Positions 16,454 to 50,091 of a stretch of DNA of 50,091 nucleotides are shown one piece after another (the first letter of the stretch is position 1; each line of letters starts with the position of its first letter). The notes below the pieces were generated by a model. It was given only the letters and a program-made list of their open reading frames with translations, did not search any database and was not told where the DNA came from. Made by a program: the position numbers and the translations under genes. This DNA is from Macrostomum lignano. Taxonomy: Eukaryota. The stretch spans positions 1-50,091 of the forward strand of contig NIVC01004332.1 in NCBI GenBank assembly GCA_002269645.1, read 5' to 3'.

Positions 16454-16518
<65 letters not shown>

Positions 16519-18774: not shown

Positions 18775-18805
<31 letters not shown>

Positions 18806-21542: not shown

Positions 21543-21914
21543 GACTTTTTCATAACGGCTCAATAATCTTGCATTTTTACTCCCTTGTTAAGCGCAAGCG
21601 GTTAATACTATAACTCAATGCTTTTTAATTATGCTGTAATTGTTTGTCAATGCAAAATAGAAACGTTTATTAAGCGCAGTACAAGTTAGGCTGGCTATGT
21701 TTTCAGTTACGTTTTTTGTTGGCCTATAGGTATGCGCATTAATGAAGTTCTGCCTAAATTTCAATGACACCTTTTCATTTTCATTAGATTGGTTTTTATT
21801 CGGGGAAAGACGCCGTTTCGTCTAAAGAGGGCGCCATTTCTTTTTAGCAGCAAGTTTTTACGACCTAAACTACTTTGTAAGTGGCGCTAGAAGTTCCAGG
21901 AAGGGGTGCAGAAG

Positions 21915-36100: not shown

Positions 36101-39100
36101 TCTAAAGTTCAATTTTTTTTAGGTTTGTGAGTCTTGGTGCTTTGTGAGGCTTGGTGCTTTGTGAGGCTTAATGCTTTGTGAGGCTTAATGCTTTGTGAGG
36201 CTTGGTGCTTTGTGAGGCTTAATGCTTTGTGAGGCTTAATGCTTTGTGAGGCTTAATGCTTTGTGAGGCTTGGTGCTTTGTGAGGCTTGGTGCTTTGTGA
36301 GGCTTAATGCTTTGTGAGGTGAGGCTTGGTGCTTTGTGAGGCTTAATGCTTTGTGAGGCTTAATGCTTTGTGAGGCTTAATGCTTTGTGAGGCTTAATGC
36401 TTTGTGAGGCTTAATGCTTTGTCGGGCTGGCGCTTGTGAGGTTTGGCACTTGGTGAGGCTGGCGCTTGTGAGGCTTGGCACTTTGTGAGGCTCTGTGAAA
36501 GTGATCCATTGGGTAGAATGCTCTATTTATTATATCTACCCACACTACGAATATATTATCCCAAACAAGGATCTGGAATACTAAAGTAATGTTCTAGTGG
36601 TCCTTTTATTAGACTTTAGGAACTGCAAGTAAACTTGCTGTCATTTGAAATTTTTTTATTTTAAGACTTTCTTAAATTACTATTCTCTTCGTTATATACA
36701 CTATAAGTAGTTTTCACTGGTCAACTATGTACTTTGAAATTTTCTAATTCTGCATGCATACATTACTAATTAGATTAGAAAGCTACTAAAAGTAGTGTTA
36801 TGGCTTATAATAGCTTTAATTATACGACAATCCGCAGGTCCTAGTCGAGGCTCTTCAAGCCGAGCTCTCATTAAAGGAGGACCTGTCTCAGCTGATAGCC
36901 GGCCTGCCAGAAGACTGGCAGGCCACCCTGAACCGGCGAGTCACCGAACTCGCCGATCTGCGTCGTCGACTTGGCGACGTGCTGTCGGATATTGAGCTGG
37001 CGGCGAGGCGGCTGCGCGACCGAGGCGGCGAACTGGCCGCCCAGCTGCACCGCCTGGAGCGGGAGAATGCCGGCCTGCGGGATCGGCTGCGGACTGGCGG
37101 CGGCTCTGCCGGAATTTCCGCTCCGTTGACCCGTGAGTTTCTTAGAAACATCAACCGCTAAGAGAGTACGCGCACGATTTTTTTGAAATAGTAAAACAAA
37201 TTTTGGATGCCGTGTAGCCCAGTGGTCTGGCGCGGCGCTCTGATGCCGATTCCAAGTGCAGTCACATAAATTTGGGGCTAAATTGGAATCTGTCAGGGGA
37301 GTCAGCGAAATAGGCAGTAATGCCTTCTCGCCCGGCTGTGTGACAATGTCGCTTCTTAAAGTGCGCCAGGGTGCACGATGAAATCGGTACCAAGGCCAAG
37401 AAGCGTCCCTTAGTCACTTGCGTCCCGGCGCGTTGCCACCGGGTGGGGGGACACAGGGGCGGACATGTCCCCCTAGTAAAAGCTCTGGGGGGGACATGCC
37501 AATGCTTTGTCCCCCCCAACCCCACCTTGTGAGTCGTTGTGGTAATTAATAATTTTTCTTCAGGACGCCAAAATATAGCGCTTTCGGCGCCAAAATGAGT
37601 GCCTGCGGCGCCAAAATGAGTGCCTGCGGCGCTAAAATGAGTACTGCGGCGCCAAAATGAGTGCCTGCGGCGCTAAAATGAGTGCCTGCGGCGCTAAAAT
37701 GAGTGCCTGCGGCGCCAAAATGAGTGCCTGCAGCGCTAAAATGAGTGCCTGCGGCGCTAAAATGAGTGCCTGCGGCGCTAAAATGAGTGCCTGTGGCGCC
37801 AAAATGAGTGCCTGCGGCGCTAAAATGAGTTCCTGTTGCGCTAAAATGAGTGCCTGCGGCGCTAAAATGAGTGCCTGCGGCGCTAAAATGAGTGCCTGCG
37901 GCGCTAAAATGAGTGCCTGCGGCGCTAAAATGAGTGCCTGCGGCGCTAAAATGAGTGCCTGTGGCGCCAAAATGAGTGCCTGCGGCGCTAAAATGAGTTC
38001 CTTTTGCGCTAAAATGAGTGCCTGCGGCGCTAAAATGAATGCCTGCGTCGCTAAAATGAATGCGTAAATGAGGGCCAAAATTTAGTCATGTACATGTTGA
38101 ATTCTTGGCTTTGTCCCCCCTCAGATCCGTTTTCGCGATTTTAAAATTATTTTATGTAGAAAAATTTAATTTCAGAAAAAATTTTCGTATAAAGGAACAC
38201 AACATCATTTTTCACTGAAAAATTAGTCTAATAAATTTGTCACGTGATTTGATAGTCTACTTAAATAGTAGACTATTTAGTTGCAGAATGATAAAACAAA
38301 AAACTTAGTTAAAACACAGTCACCAGTTAGAATTTACTCTTTGTAAATGTACACCATTGTTGTGGTTTTGTCTCGCATAGAGACGCCTAACCGCAGTACC
38401 CTGTGACACTTGTCTCTGCCTGGCTGAAAACTTGTAATGAGTTAGTAGGCTGGGTTGGAGGGTAATAGTCGATCAGGAAGGGCTGTGGGTAGCTGTATAG
38501 GAAGGCAGGCCTATACCTGTTCCAGTTGGTGCTCTGACGGTCCCCCTCGGAGTGCCATCTGAGCGAACAGCCAGCGACCCTATTAAAGCTGGAGTGTGCC
38601 AGAACCAGGACTGAGTCTGAGCAGGACGAGACCGTTGGCACGGTCACCATAGAAATGGTGGGTTGGCGAAGCAAAGGGTGAAATAGTCCCGGCGATTAGC
38701 CCTCCTGCCGCTTCAAAGATAAGAGACTGTCTTGGCAAGAGTACCCGGGGTTTAGTTGGGGGGGGGGGGAGGCTCCTTCGGTTGCCACGGCCGTGGGGGC
38801 GGTCATATGACCGGTTTTTTGGCTCTACTAACCCTGGTGAAGGCACGGGCTTCCCTGATTGGTTCTCTCAACCCCCTCTGGCCCCGGGAGGTTTTGATCT
38901 GAGCTTGGAGTAGGTTTAACGCCCTGAAGGCAGGGGGTAGGGCCCGCCCTTTGCCCGACTGGTGTTGCCTGCTCAGCTTGTTGGCCACAGTCACTCTCAC
39001 TCTAGCTTGGAAACCTTGTGTACCTGAGTACACTCCTAATCTGGAACCTTAATTATTACTAGTGGCGTAAGAGCCTGCTCAATGGCTCAGGCGCCGGATT

Positions 39101-40580
39101 ACTTATTTAGTTTAGTTTTAGTTAGTACACCATTGTTGTAAAATATCTTTCGGAAACAATGCGTTTAATGTCAATACGCCTACTTAGAGTAGACACTTAG
39201 CAATCTAGACGAAAAAATTGCGAATTCTCTCCAATCAGGACGCCGCAGCGTAGGTCCCACCACCGAGTCCACCGATCTGCTGCTGCACGCCGTCTGCCGG
39301 CTGGACGACTTCGAGCTGCTCAGAAAAGAGTCGCGCGAAAATCTTCGAGAAATACGCAGCGCCAAAAATCGAGTAGACGAACGCGCTACGCACTATAGAA
39401 GCCTGGGCGTGCTGGAGCGATCGCAGAGTGTGGATTACAGCTTGTTAAAGCATCTGGCCAGAGAGCTGGCGGGAATCCAGTTCTATGCTGAGGAGCGCGA
39501 CAGGCTGCTCAATAAATTCTGGATTTGCGAGCTGCCGCCATGGCTGTTCATAGTCGGCAGGTGCGAATTCATTAGCAAAATGTGTCCCCCTGAATCCAAT
39601 CTGCAATTCCTAGAATCGAATCCCCAATTCCTAGAATCGAATCCCCAATTCCTAGAATCGAATCCCCAATTCCTAGAATCGAATCGCCAATTCCTAGAAT
39701 CGAATCCCCAATTCCTAGAATCGAATCCCCAATTCCTAGAATCGAATCCCCAATTCCTAGAATCGATTCGCCAATTTCTAGAATCAAATCCCCAATTCCT
39801 AGAATCGAATCCCCAATTCCTAGAATCGAATCGCCAATTCCTAGAATCGAATCCCCAATTCCTAGAATCGAATCCCCAATTCCTAGAATCGATTCGCCAA
39901 TTCCTAGAATCGAATCCCCAATTCCTAGAATCGAATCCCCAATTCCTAGAATCGAATCCCTACTTCCTAGAATCGAATCCCCAATTCCTAGAATCGAATT
40001 CCCAATTCCTAGAATCGAATCCCCAATTCCTAGAATCGAATTCATCCCCGATTCCTAGAATCGAATCCCCAATTCCTAGAATCGAATTTATCCCCGATTC
40101 CTAGAATCGAAATTATCCCCGATTCCTAGAATCGAATCCCTTATTCCTAGAAACGAATCTTTAATTTCTAGAATGGAATCCACGATTCCTAGAATTGAAA
40201 GTAACCCTAGAAACGAATGTAGTTTTCTTAGAAATGAAATGGAATTCCTGGAAATTCACAACTAATCTTCCAAAATCGTAATTCGAATTCTCTGACGCAA
40301 CTAATCGAAATCCCCGATATTCTCCATCCCGTTATCAAAGGCCCGCTATTATCACCAGTACCTGCACCAGGGCTCAGCCAAGCCCAACCTTGAAGCGGAG
40401 CGCTGGAAAGGTCGCTACGCGGCTCTCAAAGAAATGCTCGAACAGCGACTATCAAGCGACGAGGCCCGATCGGTGTTCAATGAGAATTTCTCCGGAGCCG
40501 AGACGCTGCTTTCGGTTGCCAGACACAATCTCGAACGAGCCTCATCTCCGGCTGAAAGCGCGTACACCGTGCACTTTTGA
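23813..40580 (+). CDS. Gene B: centrosomin-family coiled-coil protein, ~1293 aa, full CM2-like C-terminus, no recognisable CM1. Exons 23813-23992, 24274-24375, 25136-25673, 29521-29637, 30514-30956, 31619-32047, 32634-32942, 33496-33747, 34315-34571, 34901-35035, 35796-36066, 36838-37132, 39239-39552(or 39560), 40341-40580
   Basis: GT-AG junctions with consistent phases (0,0,1,1,0,0,0,0,2,2,0,1). Long heptad-type helices. C-terminus [15 protein letters not shown]...[11 protein letters not shown]...[12 protein letters not shown] resembles myomegalin/CDK5RAP2 CM2 (H.LG.I+DY.AL; L+..FW...LP; .L..AR.NLE). The last junction is uncertain and the 30514 acceptor is weak. Confidence 0.72.
24013..24160. 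repeat. (TATC)n microsatellite, gene B intron 1
   Basis: Seen directly. Confidence 0.92.
24535..25100. repeat. ~32-33-bp minisatellite (cgcctgttagacacacgtgttagataatacct), gene B intron 2
   Basis: Direct tandem repeat. Confidence 0.9.
25750..25900. repeat. Dispersed repeat, second copy of 1830-2025 (with an internal deletion)
   Basis: Shared sequence blocks with 1830-2025. Confidence 0.7.
26049..26362 (-). mobile_element. tRNA-derived CORE-SINE, second copy
   Basis: Diverged reverse complement of 5978-6290, including A/B boxes, CORE-like domain and tail. Confidence 0.88.
26803..27714 (-). CDS. Intronless secreted protein, 303 aa: signal peptide, PAN/apple-like Cys domain and LamG/ConA-like (pentraxin-type) domain; nested antisense in gene B intron 3
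   Basis: [19 protein letters not shown] signal peptide; S...CAFLCSQ...C..WS....C apple pattern; [51 protein letters not shown] are typical LamG-like motifs. Confidence 0.88.
   Translation of the reverse strand: MLLLLPLLLGLLFCLGANAELHSSISLGGCVVPQTPQHSLTASSARMCAFLCSQLRRPCITWSHRAGVCNMSDSLQTASLTNDTDCQAWSALRQLGLVAFWPMSNATRTRNAVSNSGHLDLQENIPMQYTDSAVNFTGQSGVSERFNIDELTSVCLTSFTMSVWVKVTNPARGAMPLLEGLTMPSSCHTRFWLHPTTTDIEFTVASKVRVSGPTDTASGWTHIAAVYDKQTPEIRILVNETRQATSGSATALTSCVNFGSSVQIGAVSRNAGHNRVFQGFMRCFGVSERALSDSEVALLQGLC
28040..28255. repeat. 24-bp minisatellite (cttgtctatggtcaatactcccaa)
   Basis: Direct tandem repeat, about 9 copies. Confidence 0.92.
29030..29345. repeat. CT-rich low-complexity tract
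   Basis: Seen directly. Confidence 0.85.
29685..30025. repeat. 18-bp minisatellite (aaccttcaccaaaaccag), gene B intron 4
   Basis: Direct tandem repeat. Confidence 0.92.
30185..30390 (-). mobile_element. Possible LINE ORF2 C-terminal relic
   Basis: One minus frame ends [16 protein letters not shown], preceded by scattered C/H residues resembling a decayed CCHC motif. Weak evidence. Confidence 0.3.
31035..31345. repeat. 10-bp minisatellite (ttgggattca), gene B intron 5
   Basis: Direct tandem repeat. Confidence 0.9.
33005..33345. repeat. 20-bp minisatellite (acctgtgatatgttagacac), gene B intron 7
   Basis: Direct tandem repeat; shares tgttagacac with 24535-25100. Confidence 0.9.
35095..35645. 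repeat. 31-bp minisatellite (ttttcttagaaacttaaccatgaaaaagtga), gene B intron 10
   Basis: Direct tandem repeat. Confidence 0.92.
36130..36495. repeat. 17-bp minisatellite (gctttgtgaggcttaat), gene B intron 11
   Basis: Direct tandem repeat. Confidence 0.92.
37565..38065. repeat. 21-bp minisatellite (gcgctaaaatgagtgcctgcg), gene B intron 12
   Basis: Direct tandem repeat. Confidence 0.92.
38364..39124 (+). mobile_element. 761-bp GC-rich non-autonomous retroposon-like insertion with 15-bp target-site duplication
   Basis: GTACACCATTGTTGT at 38349-38363 and 39125-39139; 3' stem-loop GGCG..GAGCC/GGCTC..CGCC; TTTAG-like tail; no coding capacity seen. Confidence 0.72.
39595..40200. repeat. 21-bp minisatellite (aattcctagaatcgaatcccc), gene B intron 13
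   Basis: Direct tandem repeat; produces the spurious LESNPQF extension of ORF 39409-40104. Confidence 0.92.
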
Positions 40581-40769
40581 ACCCTGGCGAATCCTATAGA
40601 ATAAGTCAATTAGTTGGCCACTACTTCAAGTGAATTGATATTTTCTGCTTTCTCTGTCACGCGCGCGGCTTCTCTGCACTACACCAGTGACTGCGCGTAC
40701 GCGGAGGTATGGCCGGCCTCGCCCGATTGAAAACCCACGATTTGGTAGCCTATAAAGCGCCTCTAAGAC

Positions 40770-41440
40770 AGCCTGTCATCGCCCCCTATGGCGCCCCCTC
40801 AGCGCCCTCTTTGGCGCACCCTCAGCACCCCTATGGCACCCCCTCAGCGCCCTCCACGGCTCACCCCAGCACATCTATGGCGCCCCCTCAGTGCCCTTTA
40901 TGGCGCACCCTCAGCACCCCTAAAGCACCTCTTCAGCACCCTCTATGGCGCCCCCCACAGCACCCCTATGGCGCCCCCACAGCACCGTATGACACCCCCA
41001 CAGCACCCCTGTGGCACCCCCCACAGCACCCCTGTGGCACCCCCACAGCGCCCTCTATGGCGCACCCCACAGCACCCCTATAGCACCTCTTCAGCACCCT
41101 CTATGGCGCCCCCCACAGCACCCCTATGGCGCCCCCCACAGCACCGTATGGCACCCCCCACAGCACCCCTGTGGCACCCCACAGCACCCCTATGACACCC
41201 CCCACAGCATCCCTGTGGCACCCACAGCACCCCTATGGCACCCCCACAGCACCCCTATGGCACCCCCACAGCACCCCTATGGCACCCCCACAGCACCCCT
41301 ATGGCACCCCCCACAGCACCCCTATGGCACCCCCCACAGCACCCCTATGGCACCCCCTCAGCGCCCTCTATGGCGCACCCCACAACACCCCTATAGAACC
41401 TCTTCAGCACCCCTATGGCGCCACACCTTCAGCGCCCCTA
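40770..41440. repeat. ~21-23-bp GC-rich minisatellite (cagcacccctatggcacccccca)
   Basis: Direct tandem repeat. Confidence 0.9.
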
Positions 41441-44394
41441 TGACAAATGCGAGCGTTATCACGGATTCACTTTTGCCTTTTTTGCGTATTTATTGCATCT
41501 ACGAGTACTTATAGTTTCAATTTCCATTCTTCGTATTCACAGAAGAAAAAAGTTTAAATTGCCGCGTTGTTGTTTCTATCAGCCAAAATTCCATAGAAAA
41601 ATATACAGGTAGCTGATTACTGGGCTTTACTGGATACACTTATCACAGATTTACTAAACGGTCACAAATTTTTGTTTTATTAATTTATATACGAGTACAG
41701 TATAGGAGTTATAACTATAAGATCTAACATTTTCATGTACATGTATTTGGACTAATTTGTACTGTTTGTTACTATAGTACGAAATATACGAGTATGTACA
41801 TGTATAGTAAATGCATATTATGCTGGCTGCTTGTTCTTCGCACATACATGTACTATACTAGTAGGCTTTTATTTGCCTTTCACGCGCGTTTGTCGAATGT
41901 CGATGTGAAATAAAATTCAAACAGGCAGTTTACGTGGATCACAACTGTTTTTGGGAGTTATTAAAAATATCTTTTTCTGAATCTGCCACCCTTCGAAGCA
42001 ATCATTGAAATGAGAGTAGAATGATCGAGAAGTACACACATGTACATTTACATACATGTACTTTACTTGGTATGTACATGTAGAGCTCAAAGTAAAGAGG
42101 TACAGTAAAGGTGCAGCTAGGTAGGATCGATGACTATAGATAAGAAGCACACATGTTGCAATTATGTCTCGGATCTATCCATTTCAAATACTGCTACAAA
42201 AGAAGACTTTCGGTGTAGCTGTAGTAGTAGCCATACACTTGTGCATGTATGTATTATTTGAGCCAGTGAAGTACTTTTTTATATTTATAAATTTTTATAT
42301 GCAGGGTTAAGCGCGTCATCTAAATGTACATGTAAAATTTAATTTGGTAGTTATCTGAAGGCGCCTGCTTCCTAGTGCTTGCGTGACAATGATGATTTTA
42401 CTTCTGGTGTTTTATATTTTGCAATGTACATGTACAATCCAAATTATGCTTGAACCTCACATTTATATGCTTATAATAGTGCAGTGTTAGAATTGTATAC
42501 GCATTTTTAACTGCATGGTCGCTAGTAAATAAACTTATATTAATCGATATCACAAAGCCTATACATGTACAATTAGTTTAAAGCTCAACACGACGCAAAA
42601 TTAAATAACTCTCTCTCGGCATCGCTCTCTAACAGTATCTGTCTCCCAGAAGCGCCCCGGCCCCCTGGCCTGGTCTCTAAGTTTGGGCGCCATCGTCTCC
42701 CTCTCTCAGTAGGTATTTCCACGCGATGCCTTGTAGTTGGCTGAAACTGCATACAAGGAAGGTACAGTACGTGGGATACATGGCCATTTTACTGTTATTC
42801 ATATCGAGCTTTCGTGGTGAATTTTTCCCTTTCGTTTGGGCGGGCGCAATTTACGGAAAATTGCATGGTATTGTACATCGGGGCTTGCAGGAAACTATAT
42901 TAGGCAATAATGGGGCGCAATTTATGGGATGCATTGTTTTGACGGATGAGGGTTATCCTGCTTGAAAAAGGTAAAAGAAATATTGTACGTCGGCTCCAAT
43001 GTAGCCATTGTGAGAGCTTCTCACGGGCCGGGCCGTATAAATTAGTTATGTAAATTCAAAATAAATAATGGCAAAAAATTAGTTATACAAGACTATCAAA
43101 AATATCATGCTACATATAATTTTACCCTATTAATTTTGTACCGCATGGCTTTCCTAGTCTTCTTGGCAAAATTGCTTGTAACATTTGTTCAAATTCGTAA
43201 AGTTAAATTGCATTGACAAAAAATTTACGCATTTTTAAAAGATGTTCTCCCTCAAGCCCGCTCCATAAACTGGCACTGAGAGGCAGGAGAGCGTGATCAC
43301 TAGGCCTAACCTTAGTACAGCCTACTTCGTCTACTTAAACAACTGTGTATCTGTGGAAAAAAGTTTTTCTGCCTTGTTTGGCTTCGCTTCCCTTTTAATT
43401 GTAACTCCCCACCACCTAGCCCTATGATCTATGTCTAAATCTGTTTTTTTTATTTTAGTCTAGCCTAGCCTAGCTTGCCTTAGGCCTACTTTGTCTATGC
43501 TCGGCCTGCCCATAGCTAATTTCCTAGACCTGCCTGGCCCTTAGCAAAGAAGAGCAATGCTTTGTCTTTAGTATAGGGCCTACTTCTAACAGAGGCATGG
43601 AGTTCCCATGGACACTGCTAGGGCTAGTATACCGCAAGCCGGCACTAGCCCTAATCTATATCAGATCAGATTGAAATGTTAAATGTAAGTATCCTAGGCT
43701 AGGCAGCCTAGCAAACATCCTTTGACTACGGGCCTATGACTACATGTCTTAAGAGTTATAGGGCAAATGGTTTAAGCTGCAGTAAAGTTAAAGTAGGCCT
43801 AAGTGAGCTGGCTAGGCCTAGTTCTTGTTGTAGTATTAGGTGAGGCCTAACTCTAAACTAGGGCTAGGCCTAGTTTCAATTTTAAATGTACTAGGGGCCT
43901 ACTAGGGTTAGGGTACATGACTAAGACTGCCACAGCTATTACTGGCTACTGGTATTGAGAAGAGCTACCAATCTTCTAGGCGCTAGCATTGCTATTCCTC
44001 TCCTAGACCTAGGTTCCTCTTTTGCAGCCTTGTCTTACTGGCTCTCCTACCTACTCATTAACTCATCTCTTTAGCACTATCCAATAATATATTGTGCCAA
44101 ATTCCTCCCTTAGCTCCTCAAGTGTGGCCATCTTGGTATGTGGTAGTCTTGGTCTTATAAGTTATACCATGTTATAAGGGCCTATCTTAGTACTAGAAAT
44201 AGCCTAGTAACCTACCTAGGCAAACTGGACTTAGTATTTAGGCCTAATATATAATCTTGTGATTTTTTACTACTTTAGCCTAACTTTCAATTATATGTAG
44301 CTTTTTAAAATTATATTTATCCCTATTGGAATAGAATTAGCAAAGCCTGTAAACGCTGCATTGAGCATTACGAAAGATAGGCTCTACTTCAAGT

Positions 44395-45062
44395 TCAAAG
44401 GGTGAAAGTAGTTGTTATTTGTCTAGTGACTAGACAAATAACCTTTTGCTATTTCGGTTTTTTGTTAAAGACAAGATGCAAAATCGCACCTTAGGCTTTA
44501 CTCATTTTCAATATGCAATTTTAGGGCTCAAAGTGCAATTTCTCTTTTTCTTATTTTAAAGCAGTGCAAATAAGGTTTTAATAGAAAAATAATAGGTTGA
44601 GACCACAGTTACGTTTCAATTTCAGGGTGCAATTTTTTGATTTAAGGTGCATACATTCTATGCACAAAAATAAACCTAGTTGCTATTTGTCTAGTTAAAT
44701 TGCTAACATGAATATCTATTTGTTTAGTGATAAATATTCTAGATTTTTAAGACCTTTTCTAGTATCCTGATTAATATTTTGTTATACTAGTGCAAGCAAA
44801 GCAGATATATGTAATGCATATATGCAATTTGGCATAATTTGGTATACAAGTAAAAGTCTTTAAAATCTTGGAATATTCACCCTTGGAGTTTCTATAAAAT
44901 AGAATATCAATTTAACTAGACAAATAACAAAATGCCTATTTGTCCAGTATTAACTAGATGAATAAAGAAAGATGGCTATTATCCAGTAACCAGACAAATA
45001 GGCCCTAACCACATTGCTATTTGTCTGGTCACCAAACAAATAACAATTGCCAAGGGTGAAAA
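44395..45062. mobile_element. MITE-like repeat region with TIR-like CACCCTTGG/CCAAGGGTG (44876-45062) and repeated CTAGACAAATAAC motifs
   Basis: Perfect palindrome gttatttgtctagt-g-actagacaaataac at ~44415-44443; the motif recurs about 7 times in both orientations. Confidence 0.4.
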
Positions 45063-45399
45063 CCTACAGATGTGTGCTTGAAAATAGTGTCAATTTATTA
45101 TATAATATATTGCACTGTACACCTTTAGCATTATTAAATGATGTTCCAAAAGAGCATTTTTTGTCATAAATCAAAATTTGCTAATTTTTAAAAGCTCAAA
45201 TTTTTGACTTTTTTTATTGTATATAATTAAAAAATCTCATTCCTATCTTATTACTTGTATTAGTCTCTATTGCAAACCAAAATTAACTAAATTTTGAATA
45301 AAAAGCTTAAGGAAACTCATTTTAGGCAAATTTGTAGCTACTTAAAGTACCAATGTAAGATAAGATGCAACAGTCATGATTGCAAAATAAAAATATCAG

Positions 45400-45642
45400 A
45401 GTATTATGATGATAGTATTAATCCATTCTCTGACCAAGTTTATGTGTAAAGACTGGCTTATCATCTATTATATAAGTCTTGTCTTTTGCACTAAGTTGGT
45501 GTGCGCGCCACCTTGGAAGGCTTCTCTATTTGTGCTGCTAATTTATTGTCACTTGGATATCTGGCAACCTATTCTAGCATTACAGGTTGTTAGTTTTCTG
45601 TCCTTTTTAAACAGAAACACCTGTTTTGTATGCCTGATAATC
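45400..45642 (+). ncRNA. SNORD17: Box C/D snoRNA, SNORD17/snR65-like long form, copy 1
   Basis: C box ATGATGA 45406-45412; guide TTAATCCATTC then D' CTGA 45430-45433, complementary to LSU GAAUGGAUUAA; candidate D box 45634-45637 gives ~240 nt. The 3' end is uncertain. Confidence 0.65.
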
Positions 45643-45817
45643 CAATATGACTGCATGCATACTTGGAGATTGCTGTCAAGATGTTAAATTTGGATCTGAA
45701 TGACTCTGATAAACTTGATAGTATCTGTAAATTTTCATATTGCAGTTGTATTAAACAATATTATCAAACTAATTATCAAAAATGCTTGTTTAATTATCAA
45801 AAAACCCCAGCCTATTT

Positions 45818-45897
45818 GAATGTATAAATGATGCTACCCAACGTGTTTTGAGTCACAATGACTATGAATTAATAAAAAGAAACGATAACTGATCAAT
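45818..45897 (+). ncRNA. Candidate orphan box C/D snoRNA
   Basis: C-like ATGATGC 45828-45834; D CTGA 45889-45892; no target recognised. Confidence 0.35.
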
Positions 45898-46083
45898 TTA
45901 CTTTTGTGTGCTTATTTACAACTTACTTAATCAATATTTGCACCTATGTCCCTCTAAATATCGTTCTTTGTTTACACACATTTGCAGACTTGCTGTTTTT
46001 CCCTTGTCACGAGCAATTAACAAAAGCAAATCTGCTTCTGAAAATGTAAGTTCTGAAACATCTGGTACTTTAACAATTTGCTT

Positions 46084-46172
46084 TTTTAATTTAATGATGA
46101 ATACTTGACAAGCATATGTCGGAATGCACTCTTGTGCTTTCTGTAGATACTATTTTCATTCTGAATTTTAAA
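46084..46172 (+). ncRNA. SNORD27: Box C/D snoRNA, SNORD27/snR74-like (SSU Am28 equivalent)
   Basis: C box 46094-46100; guide GACAAGCATATG (12 nt, complementary to SSU CAUAUGCUUGUC) then D' CGGA 46120-46123; D box CTGA 46161-46164. The +5 rule hits the A in CAUAmUGC. Confidence 0.85.
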
Positions 46173-46341
46173 TTTATTCAATCAACTTTTAGGCATTGGC
46201 GCTGTCTCATGTATGGCATTGGCGAATTTTATTTCAACTAACTTTTGCAAATTTTAGGAGCTGGCATACAAAAATCGCCTACAAAGTCTTACAACATTTA
46301 TTCGGTGAGTTTTTCTTCGAAACTGTGAAACATTTGTCAGA

Positions 46342-46600
46342 GAAACGATGATGAATGCTTTAATCCATTCTCTGACTGAGCTTTTCAAATGTGCTTGAAT
46401 AGTTATGAAAGGTCTTCCAAATTGGGGTTTTTTGCCTCTATTTGTTAACCTTTTCTTTCAGGCACAAATTTGATTTGCTGGTGTGCGCGCCAGCTGGCTT
46501 GAACAGGCTCTCTTAGTGAAGTGCTGACTATTATTGTCACTTTAGGGTTTGCTTCAAGGGTGCTCGCTAAATTCCTTTTTATAGTCGAAGACTGATTATT
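46342..46600 (+). ncRNA. SNORD17: Box C/D snoRNA, SNORD17/snR65-like long form, copy 2
   Basis: C box 46348-46354; guide TTAATCCATTC then D' CTGA 46372-46375; shares TGGTGTGCGCGCCA and TTATTGTCACTT with copy 1; candidate D box 46592-46595. Confidence 0.68.
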
Positions 46601-46776
46601 TATTATACCGCCTTTGACTTGTTAGTGAGCACTATAGAAGCGTGACCCGAAAAGCGAGTGCTTGCACTTCTTTTTTGCAGAGCCGTTTGGATGTAAATTA
46701 TGGTTCTGAGCGTTCTCTGACAGCGATTATTAGTATATGGTTAGTTTTTATAGCCTAATTAACGCACCAGTTTGTC

Positions 46777-46855
46777 ATCCACAAATGATGATCAATTTTA
46801 CACCGTCATGCTGTTTGATACGCCTGATAATAAAACTATGGCAGCTGATGTGGAT
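46777..46855 (+). ncRNA. Box C/D snoRNA, family X copy 1 (guide CACCGTCATGCTGT)
   Basis: Terminal stem ATCCAC/GTGGAT; C box 46785-46791; D' TTGA 46815-46818; D box 46845-46848. Confidence 0.88.
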
Positions 46856-46969
46856 GCTATCAATGTCCTTATGACACTATTTAAAATCTAGAATATCGAT
46901 TTTAAGTTTTATATCAGATTCAGAATCCTTAGAGATAAGGTTAGGTTGTGGCTTGGTTTAAAAAACTGG

Positions 46970-47052
46970 CTGTCAAAAATGATGATAATTATTCACAACT
47001 GTTTGTTTTGAGTTAACATGACAATTTCACATGCATCACCATCTGATGTAGT
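46970..47052 (+). ncRNA. SNORD33: Box C/D snoRNA, SNORD33/snR55-like (SSU Um1269 yeast numbering)
   Basis: C box 46979-46985; guide CATGCATCACCAT (13 bp with 2 G-U pairs to SSU GUGGUGGUGCAUG) directly before D box CTGA 47043-47046. Confidence 0.8.
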
Positions 47053-47294
47053 TTATTGAGTACATTTTAATGAACATGTAAGCTATGCTTGCCATTTTAT
47101 AAAAAGTACAACCTGTCGCCCAAAAACTCTACTTTCATAGGTACTGGTAGTAGATCATTAACAAGTTCTCAGTCTACCGGTCCAGTGTTTCATTTTCTAA
47201 ATTTAAGGTAATTATTGGTTTTGACTGTATTTTGCTTTTTGTGATCATACATAAACATAGCCTGAAATTTTCATTTAAGCATGTACGTCGCTTG

Positions 47295-47385
47295 TATTCA
47301 CCAAAAATGATGACCAATTTTTATACACCGTCATGCTGTTTGACACACTTTTGATAATTAAAAACAATGGCAGCTGAGGTGAATA
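47295..47385 (+). ncRNA. Box C/D snoRNA, family X copy 2
   Basis: Perfect 8-bp terminal stem TATTCACC/GGTGAATA; C box 47307-47313; same D' guide as copy 1; D box 47374-47377. Confidence 0.88.
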
Positions 47386-47582
47386 CAATAGGCATTTCCC
47401 TTAACACCTTTGCTGCTCATCATCATTCAGAATCATCGTTTATCTCCATTTTACTAACGAAAGTATTTGTTCTTAAATCGATCTTCTAATTAAAAGCAGT
47501 CTGAAAAAATCCGAAGCAAATAGTTCTGTTCTCTTTAGTACGAGTAGAAGTCAGTAGCAAGCAAGCAACGTGTCCTCAGAAA

Positions 47583-47670
47583 TGTAATATGATGTTTGTT
47601 ATCCCTGGCTTAGTGCAATAAGCTCTATGTAGTAAATACTTTATGCCAACTTCAATGGCTGCTGATTACA
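47583..47670 (+). ncRNA. SNORD1: Box C/D snoRNA, SNORD1/snR38-like (LSU Gm2815 yeast numbering)
   Basis: Stem TGTAA/TTACA; C-like ATGATGT 47589-47595; guide GTTATCCCTG (complementary to LSU CAGGGAUAAC) then D' CTTA 47609-47612; D box 47662-47665. Confidence 0.78.
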
Positions 47671-47777
47671 GTTCTGTATACATACGACACTTGCTGCTTT
47701 TTTGGTATTCGATTTTTAATTAGGACAATATATACTTTTTTACTAATACTTAGGACTAGGTCTATTAACTGCAACTT

Positions 47778-47873
47778 GGGCGTTTTCAATGATGATTGGA
47801 ATTACCGTCGGAAGTTGGTGTACCAATTTGTGTACGCTGGCGATTCTTTGAAGAAAATTTGCTGTCTGAGCCC
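47778..47873 (+). ncRNA. SNORD65: Box C/D snoRNA, SNORD65/snR77-like (SSU Um578 yeast numbering) with a possible second U24-like guide
   Basis: Stem GGGC/GCCC; C box 47789-47795; guide TGGAATTACCG (complementary to SSU CGGUAAUUCCA) then D' CGGA 47809-47812; D box 47866-47869 preceded by GAAAATTTGCTGT. Confidence 0.83.
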
Positions 47874-47930
47874 TTGATTTGCCATTTTTATGCCTATATA
47901 CTATAGTGTAGATAGCCTTGCGTATAAGCC

Positions 47931-48016
47931 TACTTTTTATGATGATAAATACGTTTGCTTACCTTATCTGTGATCTCTTAAAGGGACGTGATAAGACACT
48001 ACAGCGCTCTGATGTA
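47931..48016 (+). ncRNA. Candidate box C/D snoRNA, target uncertain
   Basis: C box ATGATGA 47939-47945; D box CTGA 48009-48012; stem TAC/GTA; D guide ACACTACAGCGCT. Confidence 0.6.
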
Positions 48017-48194
48017 TATATATTGATCAGAAGTGTTTTTATATTGTAGAATATTTTTAATTTCTCTAACAATGCCACTTTCTCTTTATTACTACAGGTC
48101 TAAGCTGTCCTGGGGCCTTTTAAAATCAATATAAAAAGTAAGTGAATTCAAAACCAATAACCAACTCAATTTTTTCAGTAATAAGCTCTACTAT

Positions 48195-48276
48195 TATGTT
48201 TTTAATGATGACTATTTCCTTATCTACTATGATTTATTAATAATGTGAATGCAATATTTCCCGAATCTGAAATGCT
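48195..48276 (+). ncRNA. Candidate box C/D snoRNA, target uncertain
   Basis: C box 48205-48211; D' ATGA; D box CTGA 48267-48270; lies alone in a GT-AG intron (48138-48354). Confidence 0.6.
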
Positions 48277-48461
48277 AGTCTAAATTACATATATGTAAGC
48301 TTAAATTTTTAGAAGTAAATCAAAAAAATAAATTTTGTCACTAATTATTTTCAGATTTAGCGATCCAGTGTGACTCTGATCTAAATTTAAGGTAAGCTTC
48401 AATTCACTTTTTTTCATATTACTTGGGTTTATGTATAATCTTTGTTACAAGCAATAGATTG

Positions 48462-48550
48462 GCTTCATTCATGATGACTCAGATTTTATACCGTCATGTT
48501 GTATGATCTCGCATGAGTTTAGTTCTATTTGTCTCTGAGTTTTAAAGCCT
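48462..48550 (+). ncRNA. Box C/D snoRNA, family X copy 3 (guide TACCGTCATGTTGT)
   Basis: C box 48471-48477; D' ATGA 48503-48506; D box 48535-48538; guide differs from copies 1 and 2 by two C>U changes. Confidence 0.8.
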
Positions 48551-48672
48551 TTATTAATACCTTACAAACTCTTTAAAACCCCCGGATTTTAAACCCACAG
48601 AATTCCAATCCCCGGAACTCTTTATTGCATACATCCTTAAATTTAAAGTCATACTGAAACAAAAACTTTAAA

Positions 48673-48750
48673 GTTAGGATAGAGGTTTGATGAATGTAGT
48701 AAATTCGTGTTAAATAAAGATTTGAGACAAGCATTGATTGATCTGACTAA
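48673..48750 (+). ncRNA. Candidate box C/D snoRNA with 14-nt complementarity to the SSU rRNA 5' region (diverged SNORD27-like)
   Basis: TTGATGA 48687-48693; TTTGAGACAAGCAT 48721-48734 (complementary to AUGCUUGUCUCAAA); TTGA and CTGA follow; the guide-to-D spacing is irregular. Confidence 0.5.
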
Positions 48751-48884
48751 GCGATGAGATGAGAGATTAATGAGCGGCACAAACACCAGAAAAAGCAGAC
48801 AAACTTCACATGCTTACAGTTACTGTCCTGATTGAGTTACAGAGTTGAGACTTGATATCGAGACAGAAAATAAGTCTAAAGAAT

Positions 48885-49160
48885 GGTAGGGTGGCAAGTC
48901 AATAGAATTTCAGGTAGGGTGGCAGGTCAATAAAATCTCTGGTAGGTTGCAGGTCAATAGAATTTAAGGTAGGGTGGCAGGTCAATAGAATTTAAGGTAG
49001 GGTGGCAGGTCAATAGAATTTAAGGTAGGGTGGCAGGTCAATAGAATTTAAGTAGGGTGGCAGGTCAATAGAATTTCAGGTAGGGTGGCAGGTCAACAGA
49101 ATTTAAGGTAGGGTGGCAGCGTCAATAGAATTTCAGGTAGGTTAGCAGGTCAATAGAAAA
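48885..49160. repeat. 28-bp minisatellite (gtagggtggcaggtcaatagaatttaag)
   Basis: Direct tandem repeat, about 9 copies. Confidence 0.9.
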
Positions 49161-49718
49161 AATACATTAATCAAATTCTAATACTAATCAAACCCGAGCA
49201 GCACGAGGCAAGACATTATCGTGATGGTGAACCTGACTTCTCTAAGCCACCCGCCATCCGGACGCCAACCCAACCAGTTTGAGACCGCCAGATGTTGGAG
49301 GAGGGAATGAGCGACTGATCGTTCGGCAACAAATTTCATGCTAGCGTTAAGCAAAGTTACGGCAGCCAAACGATTGGGGTGGTTGCTACGCTGACAAAAA
49401 GCAGACTAACTTTAAACGTGCACAGCTCCGTACAGGATTGACTTTATGACTCGACATTTTACACGCTTGTGTCGAAATAGTTAGAGATTGTTTGTGTCAA
49501 ATTTGAGTAGGTTTGATAAAGGTGGAGCGCCGCTATAGAGGATTAAGTAAAAAAAATCCCGCTTTCTTTGCAGCAACTTTTTGCACTTTAAGGTGGAATA
49601 CTGGGAAGACGCTCTCCGTAGTGAGGTTGGGGGGGTGCAAAACGGTGTCATTTGGTTGAGCGGTTTGAGAGTCCATAGCGAACAAAATTGGCCACAGACA
49701 CACAGTTTACAGATTTTA

Positions 49719-49803
49719 GGTATAAATGATGATAGAATATTGACACCTCTTGTCTGATATTTACTAAGTAAATGCGGAGTTTATTAGCTCTATCTGATCA
49801 AGT
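49719..49803 (+). ncRNA. Double-guide box C/D snoRNA: D guide SNORD44-like (SSU Am166 human numbering) and D' guide to the snR48/SNORD60 LSU site
   Basis: C box 49726-49732; TGACACCTCTTG then D' CTGA 49754-49757 (complementary to LSU CAAGAGGUGUCA); TATTAGCTCTA then D CTGA 49794-49797 (complementary to SSU UAGAGCUAAUA). Confidence 0.85.
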
Positions 49804-50091
49804 ATTAAGCTCTTTTGTCCTAATAGAAATCGTTAAGAATCGATGCAAGTTTTCATATTCACTTATTTCATTTTAGAGGACGCTAAAATCCAGCTGGAAA
49901 ATTGTAGCCTTCTTAACAGTGCTTCAGGTCAGTTAGCAATGCTTAAGTATTTTTCCCCACCCTTATTTTACTTTTTACAATGATGAATTAATTATAGCAT
50001 AGTTCATATGAACTGTACCAGTGTACGGCATGTACAGAATTTTCAAGCCTGATATTTTATCTACCTATTAGCTACCTATTAGTTGTACCTA

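What the first reader, a model, noticed from the sequence alone, without database searches (positions are those of the whole stretch)
45400..50091. Hidden GAS5/UHG-like non-coding host gene packing about 12 C/D snoRNAs into 4.4 kb
Seen: a region with no credible ORF contains repeated ATGATGA...CTGA units with terminal stems, mostly one per short GT-AG intron between 19-67-nt exons. Knowledge: at least seven distinct guides match conserved rRNA sequence, with the +5 rule landing on or beside known 2'-O-methyl sites (guides of SNORD27, 33, 65, 44, 1, 17 and snR48). Vertebrate SNORD44 and SNORD27 are hosted in GAS5 and SNHG1. Inference: a probably unannotated snoRNA host lncRNA with a mix of guides not matching those vertebrate hosts.
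Basis: partly seen in the sequence, partly recalled or inferred. Interest (0 to 1): 0.8.

Follow-up and report, generated by a model that had tools for sequence, protein, structure and literature searches.

The report
Flatworm box C/D snoRNA gene cluster
The last 4.7 kb of the window carries 14 to 15 small RNA genes that guide methylation of ribosomal RNA, apparently lodged in the introns of a non-coding host gene; the RNAs are real but this gene arrangement is already well known in flies and vertebrates.

Summary
The + strand of 45394-50056 carries 14 credible box C/D snoRNA units and one doubtful unit. There are 12 ATGATGA C boxes where about 0.9 is expected, each with a CTGA D box 64-81 nt downstream. 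Two units are long (294 and 362 nt from C box to D box). No such units occur elsewhere in the window.

I tested the guides against real eukaryotic rDNA, applying the rule that the methylated base pairs with the fifth nucleotide upstream of the D or D' box. Seven guides land exactly on known yeast methylation sites, against about 0.9 expected. Two more land on human-only sites (18S A166, 28S U3797).

The window is from Macrostomum, a free-living flatworm, or a close relative.

The host-gene reading is plausible but inferred from sequence only:
- The predicted exons are short and have no ORF.
- The last D box lies 60-95 nt before the predicted 3' splice site in 9 of 10 complete introns.
- A 16-nt exon-end/donor junction is identical in two duplicated modules.
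- Three introns appear to hold 2-3 snoRNAs, so "one per intron" is only partly right.

Every Rfam match is below its gathering score. This is a new member of a known kind (Drosophila Uhg, GAS5, SNHG1). Interest is modest.

The parts
45394..45708 (+). U1: long box C/D snoRNA (about 315 nt), SNORD17/sn2417-like. C box at 45406, D' CTGA at 45430, D box at 45696.
   Evidence: The D' guide TTAATCCATTC points by the +5 rule to 25S U2314 (yeast numbering), which corresponds to human 28S U3797, in 8 reference rDNAs. Terminal stem is -12.5 kcal/mol. Paralog of U4. Weak Rfam sn2417/SNORD17 matches.
45820..45896 (+). U2: box C/D snoRNA with variant C box ATGATGC (45828) and D box at 45889. Paralog of U6.
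   Evidence: Shares a 22-nt internal block with U6 (family D10). The D guide AAAGAAACGATAA gives only ambiguous matches in variable rRNA regions. Weak stem. Least certain of the 14.
46086..46174 (+). U3: SNORD27/snR74-like box C/D snoRNA. C box at 46094, D' CGGA at 46120, D box at 46161.
   Evidence: A 12-nt perfect guide GACAAGCATATG points to 18S A28 (yeast), equal to human A27. Rfam SNORD27 scores 28.3 bits (gathering 52) with the same guide register.
46334..46721 (+). U4: second long SNORD17/sn2417-like snoRNA (about 385 nt). C box at 46348, D' at 46372, D box at 46706.
   Evidence: Same D' guide as U1. Terminal stem of about 10 bp, -16.1 kcal/mol. Rfam sn2417 24.5 bits, SNORD17 14.1 bits. 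Alignment with U1 keeps only the boxes, the guide and two internal blocks.
46777..46856 (+). U5: box C/D snoRNA. C box at 46785, D' TTGA at about 46814, D box at 46845. Paralog of U7 and U12.
   Evidence: 8-bp terminal stem. The D' guide ACACCGTCATGCTGT pairs with 25S 1222-1238 (yeast numbering) at 14 of 17 positions in reference rDNAs. Weak Rfam SNORD34 match, 24.7 bits.
46972..47052 (+). U6: SNORD33/snR55-like box C/D snoRNA. C box at 46979, D box at 47043.
   Evidence: The D guide CATGCATCACCAT points to 18S U1269 (yeast), equal to human U1326, in 9 references. Best Rfam match of the region: SNORD33 36.1 bits, E = 0.00075, gathering 44.
47294..47387 (+). U7: paralog of U5. C box at 47307, D box at 47374.
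   Evidence: 10-bp terminal stem of -15.5 kcal/mol whose sequence differs from U5's yet still pairs. Its 19-nt D' guide block is identical to U5's (family D3).
47581..47672 (+). U8: snR38/SNORD1/snoR38-like snoRNA. C box ATGATGT at 47589, D' CTTA at 47609, D box at 47662.
   Evidence: The guide GTTATCCCTG points to 25S G2815 (yeast) in 9 references. Rfam snoR38 23.7 bits and GlsR6 with the same guide register. Stem -8.8 kcal/mol.
47781..47873 (+). U9: snR77/SNORD65/snoR77Y-like snoRNA. C box at 47789, D' CGGA at 47809, D box at 47866.
   Evidence: The guide TGGAATTACCG points to 18S U578 (yeast), equal to human U627, in 9 references. Rfam snoR77Y 23.2 bits with the same register. GGGC/GCCC outer stem.
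47934..48016 (+). U10: box C/D snoRNA. C box at 47939, D box at 48009. Target not established.
   Evidence: Canonical boxes and spacing of 74 nt. Only a weak D' match, to 25S near G2272 (12 Watson-Crick, 2 G-U, 1 mismatch), and no D-guide match. No Rfam match.
48200..48274 (+). U11: box C/D snoRNA. C box at 48205, D' ATGA at 48229, D box at 48267.
   Evidence: The D' guide TTTCCTTATCTAC pairs with 13 Watson-Crick and 1 G-U pairs to conserved 25S 1889-1902 in 8 references. The predicted site is G1892 (yeast numbering), 4 nt from known Um1888. No Rfam match.
48462..48549 (+). U12: third paralog of U5 and U7. C box at 48471, D' ATGA, D box at 48535.
   Evidence: 26-nt guide block 81% identical to U5's (family D3). 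Outer stem -7.0 kcal/mol.
48687..48831 (+). U13: doubtful C/D-like unit. TTGATGA at 48687, CTGA at 48828.
   Evidence: A 14-nt perfect complement to 18S 27-40. The guide sits 34 nt from the C box, there is no terminal stem and no Rfam match. Perfect matches of 13 nt or more occur about 0.09 per kb per strand in the control sequence, so this may be chance.
49719..49801 (+). U14: double-guide snoRNA. C box at 49726, D' CTGA at 49754, D box at 49794.
   Evidence: The D guide TTATTAGCTCTA points to 18S A164 (yeast numbering), equal to human A166, the SNORD44 site. The D' guide GACACCTCTTGT points to 25S G2791, an snR48 site. Rfam Z102/R77 28.2 bits.
49975..50056 (+). U15: snR60/Z15-like snoRNA. 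C box at 49980, D' ATGA at 50008, D box at 50049.
   Evidence: The guide GCATAGTTCA points to 25S A817 (yeast) in 8 references. Rfam snR60_Z15 23.0 bits with the same register.
45988..46045 (+). Predicted host exon E2 (58 nt). An upstream exon E1 would end at 45354 before the donor GTAAGA.
   Evidence: Acceptor tttgcag| and donor |GTAAGT. Prediction only.
46258..46304 (+). Predicted host exon E3 (47 nt).
   Evidence: Acceptor attttag| lies 93 nt after the U3 D box; donor |GTGAGT.
46918..46939 (+). Predicted host exon E4 (22 nt).
   Evidence: Acceptor lies 69 nt after the U5 D box; donor |GTTAGG.
47141..47207 (+). Predicted host exon E5 (67 nt).
   Evidence: Acceptor lies 94 nt after the U6 D box. 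The exon end plus donor, TCTAAATTTAAG|GTAA, is identical to that of E8.
47539..47583 (+). Predicted host exon E6 (45 nt). Doubtful.
   Evidence: Good acceptor ctctttag|, but the only nearby donor (GTAATA at 47584) lies inside the terminal stem of U8.
48098..48137 (+). Predicted host exon E7 (40 nt).
   Evidence: Acceptor lies 85 nt after the U10 D box; donor |GTAAGT.
48355..48391 (+). Predicted host exon E8 (37 nt).
   Evidence: Acceptor ttattttcag| lies about 84 nt after the U11 D box; donor |GTAAGC. Its 3' half is homologous to E5.
48601..48672 (+). Possible host exon E8b (72 nt). Doubtful.
   Evidence: Acceptor acccacag| lies about 62 nt after the U12 D box. It contains a degenerate copy of the TTAAATTTAAAG motif. 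Donor |GTTAGG, as in E4.
49574..49620 (+). Predicted host exon E9 (47 nt).
   Evidence: Acceptor ctttctttgcag| and donor |GTGAGG.
49877..49927 (+). Predicted host exon E10 (51 nt). The gene runs off the window end.
   Evidence: Acceptor lies 79 nt after the U14 D box; donor |GTCAGT. U15 follows in an intron cut by the window end.
48885..49158 (.). Minisatellite of 28 nt x 9.8 copies inside the long predicted intron 9.
   Evidence: Tandem Repeats Finder score 441. It explains why this intron is atypically long.

Best explanation
Window 45394-50091 (+ strand) is a dense cluster of 14 (possibly 15) box C/D snoRNA genes in a Macrostomum-type flatworm genome.

What each unit does. Each unit would assemble with fibrillarin, Nop56, Nop58 and Snu13. 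Its 10-14-nt antisense element lies just upstream of a D or D' box and pairs with rRNA. The rRNA nucleotide paired to the fifth guide position is 2'-O-methylated.

Targets shown by complementarity and register:
- 18S A28, U578 and U1269 (yeast numbering)
- 18S A164 in yeast numbering, equal to human A166
- 25S A817, G2791 and G2815
- 25S U2314, equal to human 28S U3797

Inferred targets: 25S G1892 (U11) and 25S near 1226-1227 (U5, U7, U12).

How they are most likely made (inferred, not shown). One Pol II transcript of a non-protein-coding host gene has about 10 short exons. The snoRNAs lie in its introns and are released by splicing, debranching and exonucleolytic trimming. The spliced exon RNA is a by-product. 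Most introns carry one snoRNA placed 60-95 nt upstream of the 3' splice site; three appear to carry two or three.

How the cluster grew. It grew by tandem duplication of exon-intron-snoRNA modules and of single snoRNAs, followed by divergence of the guides.
For: snoRNA identity:
- C-box enrichment is about 14-fold and strand-specific.
- C-to-D spacing is 64-81 nt in 12 units.
- Seven units have stable terminal stems. The stem sequence differs between paralogs U5 and U7, and between U1 and U4, while pairing is kept.

Guide function:
- I used 10 complete eukaryotic rDNA units fetched from metagenomes.
- Yeast numbering was checked by sequence length (1800 and 3396 nt) and by 55 of 55 correct bases at remembered methylation sites.
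- Box-anchored guides with the +5 rule hit known yeast sites exactly 7 times out of 56 predictions on the + strand. The - strand gave 0 of 49 and the rest of the window 11 of 709. My Poisson estimate is p of about 3e-5.
- Two further guides hit sites methylated in human (A166; U3797, with SNORD17 to U3797 confirmed in PMC5025248).
- Rfam consensus guides of SNORD27, SNORD33, snoR38, snoR77Y, snR60/Z15, Z102/R77 and sn2417 align in the same register.
- Between paralogs only the boxes, guides and stems are conserved.

Host gene:
- There is no ORF. The concatenated predicted exons (488 nt) have stops in all frames and no ATG-ORF longer than 26 codons.
- Consensus donors GTAAGT or GTGAGT lie 29-98 nt upstream of units.
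- Acceptors lie 60-95 nt downstream of the last D box in 9 of 10 complete introns.
- The 16-nt exon-end/donor junction TCTAAATTTAAG|GTAA is identical in two duplicated modules whose intron flanks have diverged.

Organism: a LamG ORF is 81% identical to a Macrostomum lignano protein.
Against: - No transcript, small-RNA or methylation data could be reached, so expression, exact ends and splicing are unproven.
- All Rfam matches are below gathering score.
- Donor-like GTRAG motifs are not clearly enriched on the + strand (9 versus 5). Several of my acceptors fail a simple pyrimidine-tract filter.
- The donor proposed for exon E6 overlaps the U8 stem. Three introns would hold 2-3 snoRNAs, which departs from the one-per-intron rule of animal host genes.
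- The species' own rRNA was not available. Guides of U2, U5/U7/U12, U10, U13 and most D guides have no secure target.
- The yeast rRNA reference and the list of known sites come from my memory. They were checked only for internal consistency and against real rDNA alignments.
Confidence: 0.72

Rival explanations
1. The same snoRNAs are made from an independently transcribed polycistronic precursor. Endonuclease (Rnt1/RNase III-type) and exonucleases cut it without any splicing, as in plant, trypanosome and some yeast snoRNA clusters. The 'exons' are just spacers.
For: - Several neighbouring units have no room for an exon between them: U4-U5 are 55 nt apart, U9-U10 60 nt, U8-U9 108 nt.
- Donor-like motifs are not significantly strand-biased.
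- One predicted donor lies inside a snoRNA stem.
- No transcript evidence is available.
Against: - Strong consensus donors (GTAAGT, GTGAGT) and pyrimidine-rich acceptors occur in the right order around most units.
- The D box lies at a regular 60-95 nt from the acceptor. From my own knowledge, this is the spacing expected for splicing-coupled assembly of intronic C/D snoRNPs in animals.
- The 16-nt exon/donor junction is perfectly conserved between duplicated modules while the surrounding spacer diverged.
- Animal snoRNAs are overwhelmingly intronic (PMC4430873, PMC11014333).
Confidence: 0.18
2. The host is a protein-coding gene, or the cluster lies in a long intron or UTR of one. Its coding exons would lie outside the window end, or I have mis-drawn them.
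For: - The window ends at 50091 inside the unit, so downstream exons are unseen.
- Many animal snoRNAs sit in ribosomal-protein or translation-factor genes (PMC11014333).
- Human SNORD17 is in SNX5 (PMC5025248).
Against: - Across 4.7 kb and about 10 predicted exons, no frame stays open.
- No ORF of 50 aa or more looks coding.
- The nearest upstream coding exon ends near 39.6 kb, 5.7 kb away.
- Eleven consecutive non-coding exons would be unusual for a 5' UTR.
Confidence: 0.07
3. The units are chance box motifs or dead snoRNA pseudogenes with no function.
For: All Rfam matches are below gathering score. U2, U10 and U13 lack secure targets.
Against: - The enrichment, the strand bias and the spacing.
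- Exact +5 hits on nine known methylation sites.
- Selective conservation of boxes, guides and stems between paralogs.
Confidence: 0.03

Closest known systems
Drosophila Uhg genes (Uhg1-5, 7, 8)
   Same: They are non-coding, with no recognisable ORF. They have many short exons and many box C/D snoRNAs on one strand in consecutive short introns: up to 16 introns, 48 snoRNAs in seven genes (PMC4430873). They host about 42% of expressed fly C/D snoRNAs (PMC11014333). This is the nearest invertebrate precedent in density and layout.
   Different: In flies each intron carries a single snoRNA. Here three predicted introns seem to carry two or three. Splicing, Myc/E-box control and expression are unknown here. 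There is no CACGTG in 44800-50091. The set of guides differs.
Vertebrate GAS5 and SNHG1 (UHG)
   Same: They are non-coding multi-snoRNA hosts whose function lies in the introns. From my own knowledge, SNORD44 sits in GAS5 and SNORD27 in SNHG1, and both guide families are present here (U14, U3).
   Different: Here one locus combines guide families that vertebrates spread over several hosts: SNORD27, 33, 65, 44, 1 and 17. SNORD17 is in SNX5 (PMC5025248); the other locations are from my own knowledge. There is no sequence similarity of exons. A 5' TOP start and NMD sensitivity could not be tested. This is an analogue, not an orthologue.
Conserved methylation-guide families SNORD27/snR74, SNORD33/snR55, SNORD65/snR77, SNORD44, SNORD1/snR38, SNORD17/sn2417, snR48, snR60
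   Same: The antisense elements are identical or nearly identical, in the same register relative to the D or D' box, and predict the same rRNA nucleotide.
   Different: Outside the boxes and guides there is no detectable similarity. All covariance-model scores are below gathering (13-36 bits against cut-offs of 40-80). D' boxes are degenerate (CGGA, CTTA, ATGA, TTGA). U14 combines an snR48-type guide and a SNORD44-type guide in one RNA. The SNORD17-like RNAs are 315-385 nt, against a 238-position Rfam model.
Plant and fungal polycistronic or intronic snoRNA clusters (e.g. Neurospora UHG-like clusters, PMC2780460)
   Same: Several C/D snoRNAs are packed tens of nucleotides apart, sometimes more than one per intron.
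   Different: Those lineages commonly use splicing-independent processing. Here most units show animal-type intron placement.

Membership tests
Box C/D snoRNA (class) | C box RUGAUGA near the 5' end and D box CUGA near the 3' end, 60-300 nt apart | tested here: met
   12 units have ATGATGA and 2 have a one-base variant. All have CTGA at 64-81 nt, or at 294 and 362 nt for U1 and U4.
Box C/D snoRNA (class) | Terminal stem bringing the C and D boxes together | tested here: inconclusive
   Stable flank pairing for U1, U4, U5, U7, U8, U9 and U12. Weak or none for the other eight. From my own knowledge, weak stems are common for intronic snoRNAs.
Box C/D snoRNA (class) | Antisense element of 10 nt or more ending 1-2 nt before D or D', with the methylated nucleotide opposite the fifth guide position | tested here: met
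   Nine units (U1, U3, U4, U6, U8, U9, U11, U14, U15) meet this against conserved rRNA. Seven guides hit known yeast sites exactly, against 1.55% of predictions in controls.
Box C/D snoRNA (class) | Stable expressed RNA bound by fibrillarin, Nop56, Nop58 and Snu13; target actually methylated | not testable with these tools
   No expression, RNP or RiboMeth-seq data could be reached.
Non-coding multi-snoRNA host gene (Uhg / GAS5 / SNHG1 type) | Several snoRNAs on one strand, each inside an intron of one transcription unit | tested here: inconclusive
   All units are on the + strand. A GT-AG intron model fits, with D box to 3' splice site of 60-95 nt in 9 of 10 complete introns. It rests on consensus motifs only.
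Non-coding multi-snoRNA host gene (Uhg / GAS5 / SNHG1 type) | One snoRNA per intron | tested here: not met
   In the best model 7 introns hold one unit, but U1+U2, U4+U5 and U8+U9+U10 share introns. The gaps of 55-110 nt leave no plausible exon.
Non-coding multi-snoRNA host gene (Uhg / GAS5 / SNHG1 type) | Spliced exons lack a meaningful ORF | tested here: met
   In the 488 nt of predicted exons the longest ATG-ORF is 26 codons, with stops in all frames. No credible genomic ORF.
Non-coding multi-snoRNA host gene (Uhg / GAS5 / SNHG1 type) | 5' TOP transcription start; spliced RNA unstable through NMD | not testable with these tools
   The start site is unknown. A TATA-like TATATA lies at 45220. 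Many Macrostomum genes are trans-spliced (my own knowledge), which could replace a TOP start.
Rfam SNORD33, SNORD27, snoR38, snoR77Y, snoZ102_R77, snosnR60_Z15, SNORD17, sn2417 | Covariance-model score at or above the family's gathering score | tested here: not met
   Scores against cut-offs: 36.1/44, 28.3/52, 23.7/45, 23.2/52, 28.2/40, 23.0/41, 14.1/45 and 24.5/80 bits.
Rfam SNORD33, SNORD27, snoR38, snoR77Y, snoZ102_R77, snosnR60_Z15, SNORD17, sn2417 | Same antisense element, same register to the box, same rRNA target | tested here: met
   The consensus guides align base for base with the window guides. The targets were confirmed independently on rDNA.

The most novel reading that the evidence does not exclude
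The locus may not obey the animal rule of one snoRNA per intron with splicing-dependent release. Instead it could mix single-snoRNA introns with multi-snoRNA introns that need extra endonucleolytic cuts, a plant-like feature in a bilaterian. In addition, the two 315-385-nt SNORD17-like RNAs keep two internal blocks, TGGTGTGCGCGCCA and TTATTGTCACTT. These are complementary to neighbouring 18S segments (yeast about 424-431 and 462-472) and are not followed by D' boxes. They could therefore have a second, non-methylating role in 18S folding or processing.
Probability: 0.12. Interest if true: 0.55.

Novelty: new member of a known kind. Interest (0 to 1): 0.3.

Why it matters
Flatworm snoRNAs are barely annotated. 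A homology survey of Schistosoma genomes found no unambiguous homologue of any known snoRNA except U3 (PMC2770079). I found no paper on Macrostomum snoRNAs.

This locus gives at least nine guides with assignable, deeply conserved rRNA targets in one place. It can seed covariance models for the phylum. It also predicts which conserved methylations Macrostomum keeps, and it gives a few candidate lineage-specific sites (25S G1892, 25S near 1226-1227).

It also shows that the dedicated non-coding host design seen in flies and vertebrates probably exists in Platyhelminthes, with a different assortment of guides. That supports repeated, independent assembly of such hosts by module duplication. None of this changes current understanding of snoRNA biology; it is a useful annotation.

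Tried and rejected
1. Rfam at gathering threshold found only two tRNA matches in the whole window. The snoRNAs are too divergent, so I used E-value mode and guide analysis instead.
2. A strict detector requiring a contiguous terminal stem of 4 bp or more within 2 nt of the boxes found only 2 of the units. I dropped it as too strict.
3. Raw complementarity scans were as noisy in control sequence as in the region. This applied to 10-11-mers against 120 rDNA loci, and to 12 or more pairs with G-U and one mismatch. Only the box-anchored +5 test discriminates.
4. An exact-protein look-up of a window ORF to find the source contig returned nothing on record. No orthologous locus could be fetched, so there is no cross-species covariation test.
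5. I examined 48545-49720 for another RNA. It has no repeat copies elsewhere in the window and no unusual folding (z = +1.2 and +0.6). The only Rfam match is a spurious GP_knot2 hit inside the minisatellite. I treat this stretch as intron filler.
6. SNORD17 homology beyond the 5' guide: the 14-bit alignment is full of non-canonical pairs, so it is not evidence.
7. U13 as a real snoRNA: I rate it doubtful (see parts).
8. Supplementary tables of the Drosophila methylation map, which could have placed U11's site, are not held.
9. A literature check of the snR38 and snR48 target sites found no paper. Those assignments rest on my memory and on the base-identity check.

Full report
**Where the window comes from.** The window is eukaryotic. 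GC-rich exons alternate with AT-rich spacers, and minisatellites are frequent. A single-exon LamG-domain ORF at 26803-27714 (- strand) is 81% identical over 99% of its length to Macrostomum lignano protein A0A1I8I643. The source is therefore Macrostomum or a close relative. The exact protein is not on record in the contig collection, so no orthologous locus could be fetched.

- ATGATGA occurs 12 times on the + strand of 45400-50091 and twice on the - strand. A first-order Markov model expects 0.86, with a maximum of 6 in 2000 simulations. The other 45 kb has 10 copies, mostly inside one minisatellite.
- Each of the 12 copies is followed by CTGA at 64-81 nt. For two units the distance is 294 and 362 nt. 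Two further units have one-base C-box variants.
- Nowhere else in the window does such a pair occur, apart from two chance pairs in a repeat and in coding sequence.
- Flank pairing is strong for seven units (U1, U4, U5, U7, U8, U9, U12) and weak for the others.
- The only ORF of 90 aa or more in the region starts inside a C box.

I number the units U1-U15. Coordinates are in the parts list. U13 is doubtful.

**Are they methylation guides?** Rfam at gathering threshold finds none. In E-value mode every sub-threshold snoRNA match lies on the + strand and coincides with a unit:
- SNORD33, 36.1 bits, E = 0.00075
- SNORD27, 28.3 bits
- Z102/R77, 28.2 bits
- SNORD34, 24.7 bits
- sn2417, 24.5 bits
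- snoR38, 23.7 bits
- snoR77Y, 23.2 bits
- snR60/Z15, 23.0 bits
- SNORD17, 14.1 bits

In these alignments the family consensus guide matches the window base for base, in the same register to the D or D' box.

For an independent test I fetched 120 eukaryotic rDNA loci from metagenomes. I extracted ten complete 18S/28S units and aligned them to yeast rRNA for numbering. The yeast sequences and the list of 55 yeast 2'-O-methyl sites are from my memory. They have the correct lengths (1800 and 3396 nt), and all 55 sites carry the expected base. They align at 64-82% identity to the real rDNAs.

I anchored guides on every box-like tetramer and took the nucleotide opposite the fifth guide position:

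| Unit | Guide | Predicted site (yeast numbering) | Family equivalent |
|---|---|---|---|
| U3 | D' | 18S A28 | snR74 / SNORD27 |
| U6 | D | 18S U1269 | snR55 / SNORD33 |
| U8 | D' | 25S G2815 | snR38 / SNORD1 |
| U9 | D' | 18S U578 | snR77 / SNORD65 |
| U14 | D' | 25S G2791 | snR48 |
| U14 | D | 18S A164 = human A166 | SNORD44 |
| U15 | D' | 25S A817 | snR60 |
| U1, U4 | D' | 25S U2314 = human 28S U3797 | SNORD17 |

The SNORD17 target is confirmed in PMC5025248. The yeast-human offset of 1483 is consistent at five neighbouring sites from my memory.

In the control, 7 of 56 conserved-target predictions on the region's + strand fall exactly on known yeast sites. One of the seven, 25S A1449 from a CTGG tetramer inside U8, pairs weakly (8 Watson-Crick and 4 G-U pairs) and may be chance. 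The - strand gives 0 of 49, and the rest of the window (both strands) gives 11 of 709.

The CAGGGAUAAC guide of U8 is the snR38/SNORD1 type.

**Guides without a secure target.**
- U11 has a canonical layout: C box, 3 nt, 13-nt guide, 1 nt, then D' ATGA. It forms 13 Watson-Crick and 1 G-U pairs with conserved 25S 1889-1902. The predicted site is G1892, 4 nt from yeast Um1888, and I cannot match it to a known site.
- The paralogs U5, U7 and U12 share ACCGTCATG(C/T)TGT, which pairs with 25S 1222-1238 with one internal mismatch in all references. It may be perfect on the species' own rRNA.
- U2, U10 and most D guides find nothing convincing.
- U13's 14-nt perfect match to 18S 27-40 is not significant on its own, because perfect matches of 13 nt or more occur about 0.09 per kb per strand in controls. 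Its layout is also atypical.

**Evidence from paralogs.**
- U1 and U4 align at 73% column identity with many indels. They keep the C box, the 17-nt guide plus D', the C'/D end, and two internal blocks (TGGTGTGCGCGCCA and TTATTGTCACTT). Their terminal stems differ in part yet both pair.
- U5 and U7 keep boxes and guides while their 8-10-bp stems have different sequences.
- U2 and U6 share a 22-nt internal block but have different D guides.

This is the pattern expected of functional snoRNA paralogs that diverge in their guides.

**Host gene.** A GT-AG model can be drawn with exons of 22-73 nt.
- Donors include GTAAGT (46046, 48138), GTGAGT (46305), GTAAGC (48392), GTAAGA (45355) and GTGAGG (49621).
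- Single-snoRNA introns are 201-331 nt long.
- The first unit starts 29-98 nt after the donor. The exception is intron 6, whose first unit U8 overlaps the proposed donor.
- The last D box ends 60-95 nt before the acceptor in 9 of 10 complete introns. From my own knowledge, this matches the placement needed for splicing-coupled C/D snoRNP assembly in animals.
- The concatenated exons (488 nt) have stops in all frames and no ATG-ORF above 26 codons.
- Most tellingly, two duplicated modules (exon E5 plus U7, exon E8 plus U12) share an identical 16-nt exon-end/donor junction TCTAAATTTAAG|GTAA and a conserved TCCAGTGT in the exon. The intron flanks between them have diverged.

Against the model:
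- Donor-like motifs are not clearly strand-biased.
- Several acceptors are A-rich.
- The donor for E6 lies inside the U8 stem.
- U1+U2, U4+U5 and U8+U9+U10 are too close for intervening exons.

I therefore rate the snoRNA cluster as near certain. The spliced non-coding host is the most likely but unproven mode of expression, at roughly 0.7. A splicing-independent polycistronic precursor is the main rival.

**The odd stretch 48545-49720.** It holds the doubtful U13, a minisatellite of 28 nt x 9.8 copies and a GC-richer segment. That segment has no repeats in the window, no notable folding and no real Rfam match. I read the stretch as an expanded intron.

**Comparison with what is known.** Dedicated non-coding hosts packed with C/D snoRNAs are long known. 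Drosophila Uhg genes have up to 16 introns with one snoRNA each and no ORF (PMC4430873), and they host about 42% of expressed fly C/D snoRNAs (PMC11014333). Vertebrates have GAS5 and SNHG1. Fungal and plant clusters also exist (PMC2780460).

The present locus is an analogue in a flatworm, with its own assortment of guides. It is not an orthologue of GAS5 or UHG. Flatworm snoRNAs are poorly annotated (PMC2770079), and I found no paper on Macrostomum snoRNAs. The annotation is useful but not surprising.

**Verdict.** This is a new member of a known kind, with interest of about 0.3.

Noticed in passing
window 45497-45510 and 45543-45554 (U1); 46479-46492 and 46531-46542 (U4): The two long SNORD17-like RNAs keep two invariant internal blocks, TGGTGTGCGCGCCA and TTATTGTCACTT. 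These are complementary to nearby 18S segments (GGCGCGCA and AGTGACAATAA; 13 of 13 against yeast 18S for the U1 copy). They are not followed by a conserved D'-like box, and their role is unknown.
   Followed up: partly
window 47196-47211 and 48380-48395; also 48636-48647 and the repeat unit at 48885-49158: The motif TCTAAATTTAAG|GTAA is identical at two predicted exon-donor junctions. A degenerate copy (TTAAATTTAAAG) and the 28-nt minisatellite unit (GAATTTAAG|GTAGGG) resemble it. This suggests module duplication, and perhaps that the minisatellite arose from a junction sequence.
   Followed up: partly
window 45822-45836, 47584-47595, 49720-49734: Three units (U2, U8, U14) have a donor-like GTATAA or GTAATA 0-1 nt before the C box. 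U2 and U14 share 14 of 15 nt there. If these are real 5' splice sites, the snoRNA would begin at the very 5' end of its intron. It could equally be chance.
   Followed up: no
window 5977-6051 (+) and 26293-26362 (-): Rfam calls two tRNA-like sequences (37.4 and 34.4 bits). ARAGORN accepts only the first, as tRNA-Val(CAC). Both share GGAATCGAACCC and similar flanking ORF text, so the second may be a tRNA-derived repeat or a pseudogene.
   Followed up: no
window 14486-19286 and 30504-39560 (+): Two apparently paralogous multi-exon coiled-coil genes lie in tandem, with similar C-terminal exons (...[19 protein letters not shown]... versus ...[19 protein letters not shown]...). One contains a long in-frame [16 protein letters not shown] repeat, which gives a presumably spurious Pfam match to phage T4 gp5 C-terminal repeats.
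   Followed up: no
window 11381-11978, 13401-14477, 19486-20212, 21881-22471, 28028-28408, 29571-30051, 37632-38078, 39572-40104, 40709-41514: The window is unusually rich in minisatellites, which produce long spurious ORFs on both strands. The one at 19.5-20.2 kb contains repeated GATGATGA and TCTCACCCTCTCTGA motifs that mimic C/D boxes and rRNA complementarity.
   Followed up: partly
window 44905-45046: Just upstream of the cluster lie short inverted or direct repeats built on AGACAAATA / TATTTGTCT, with weak copies at 44412-44440 and 44680-44705. This is possibly a MITE-like element next to the presumed promoter. A TATA-like TATATA lies at 45220.
   Followed up: no
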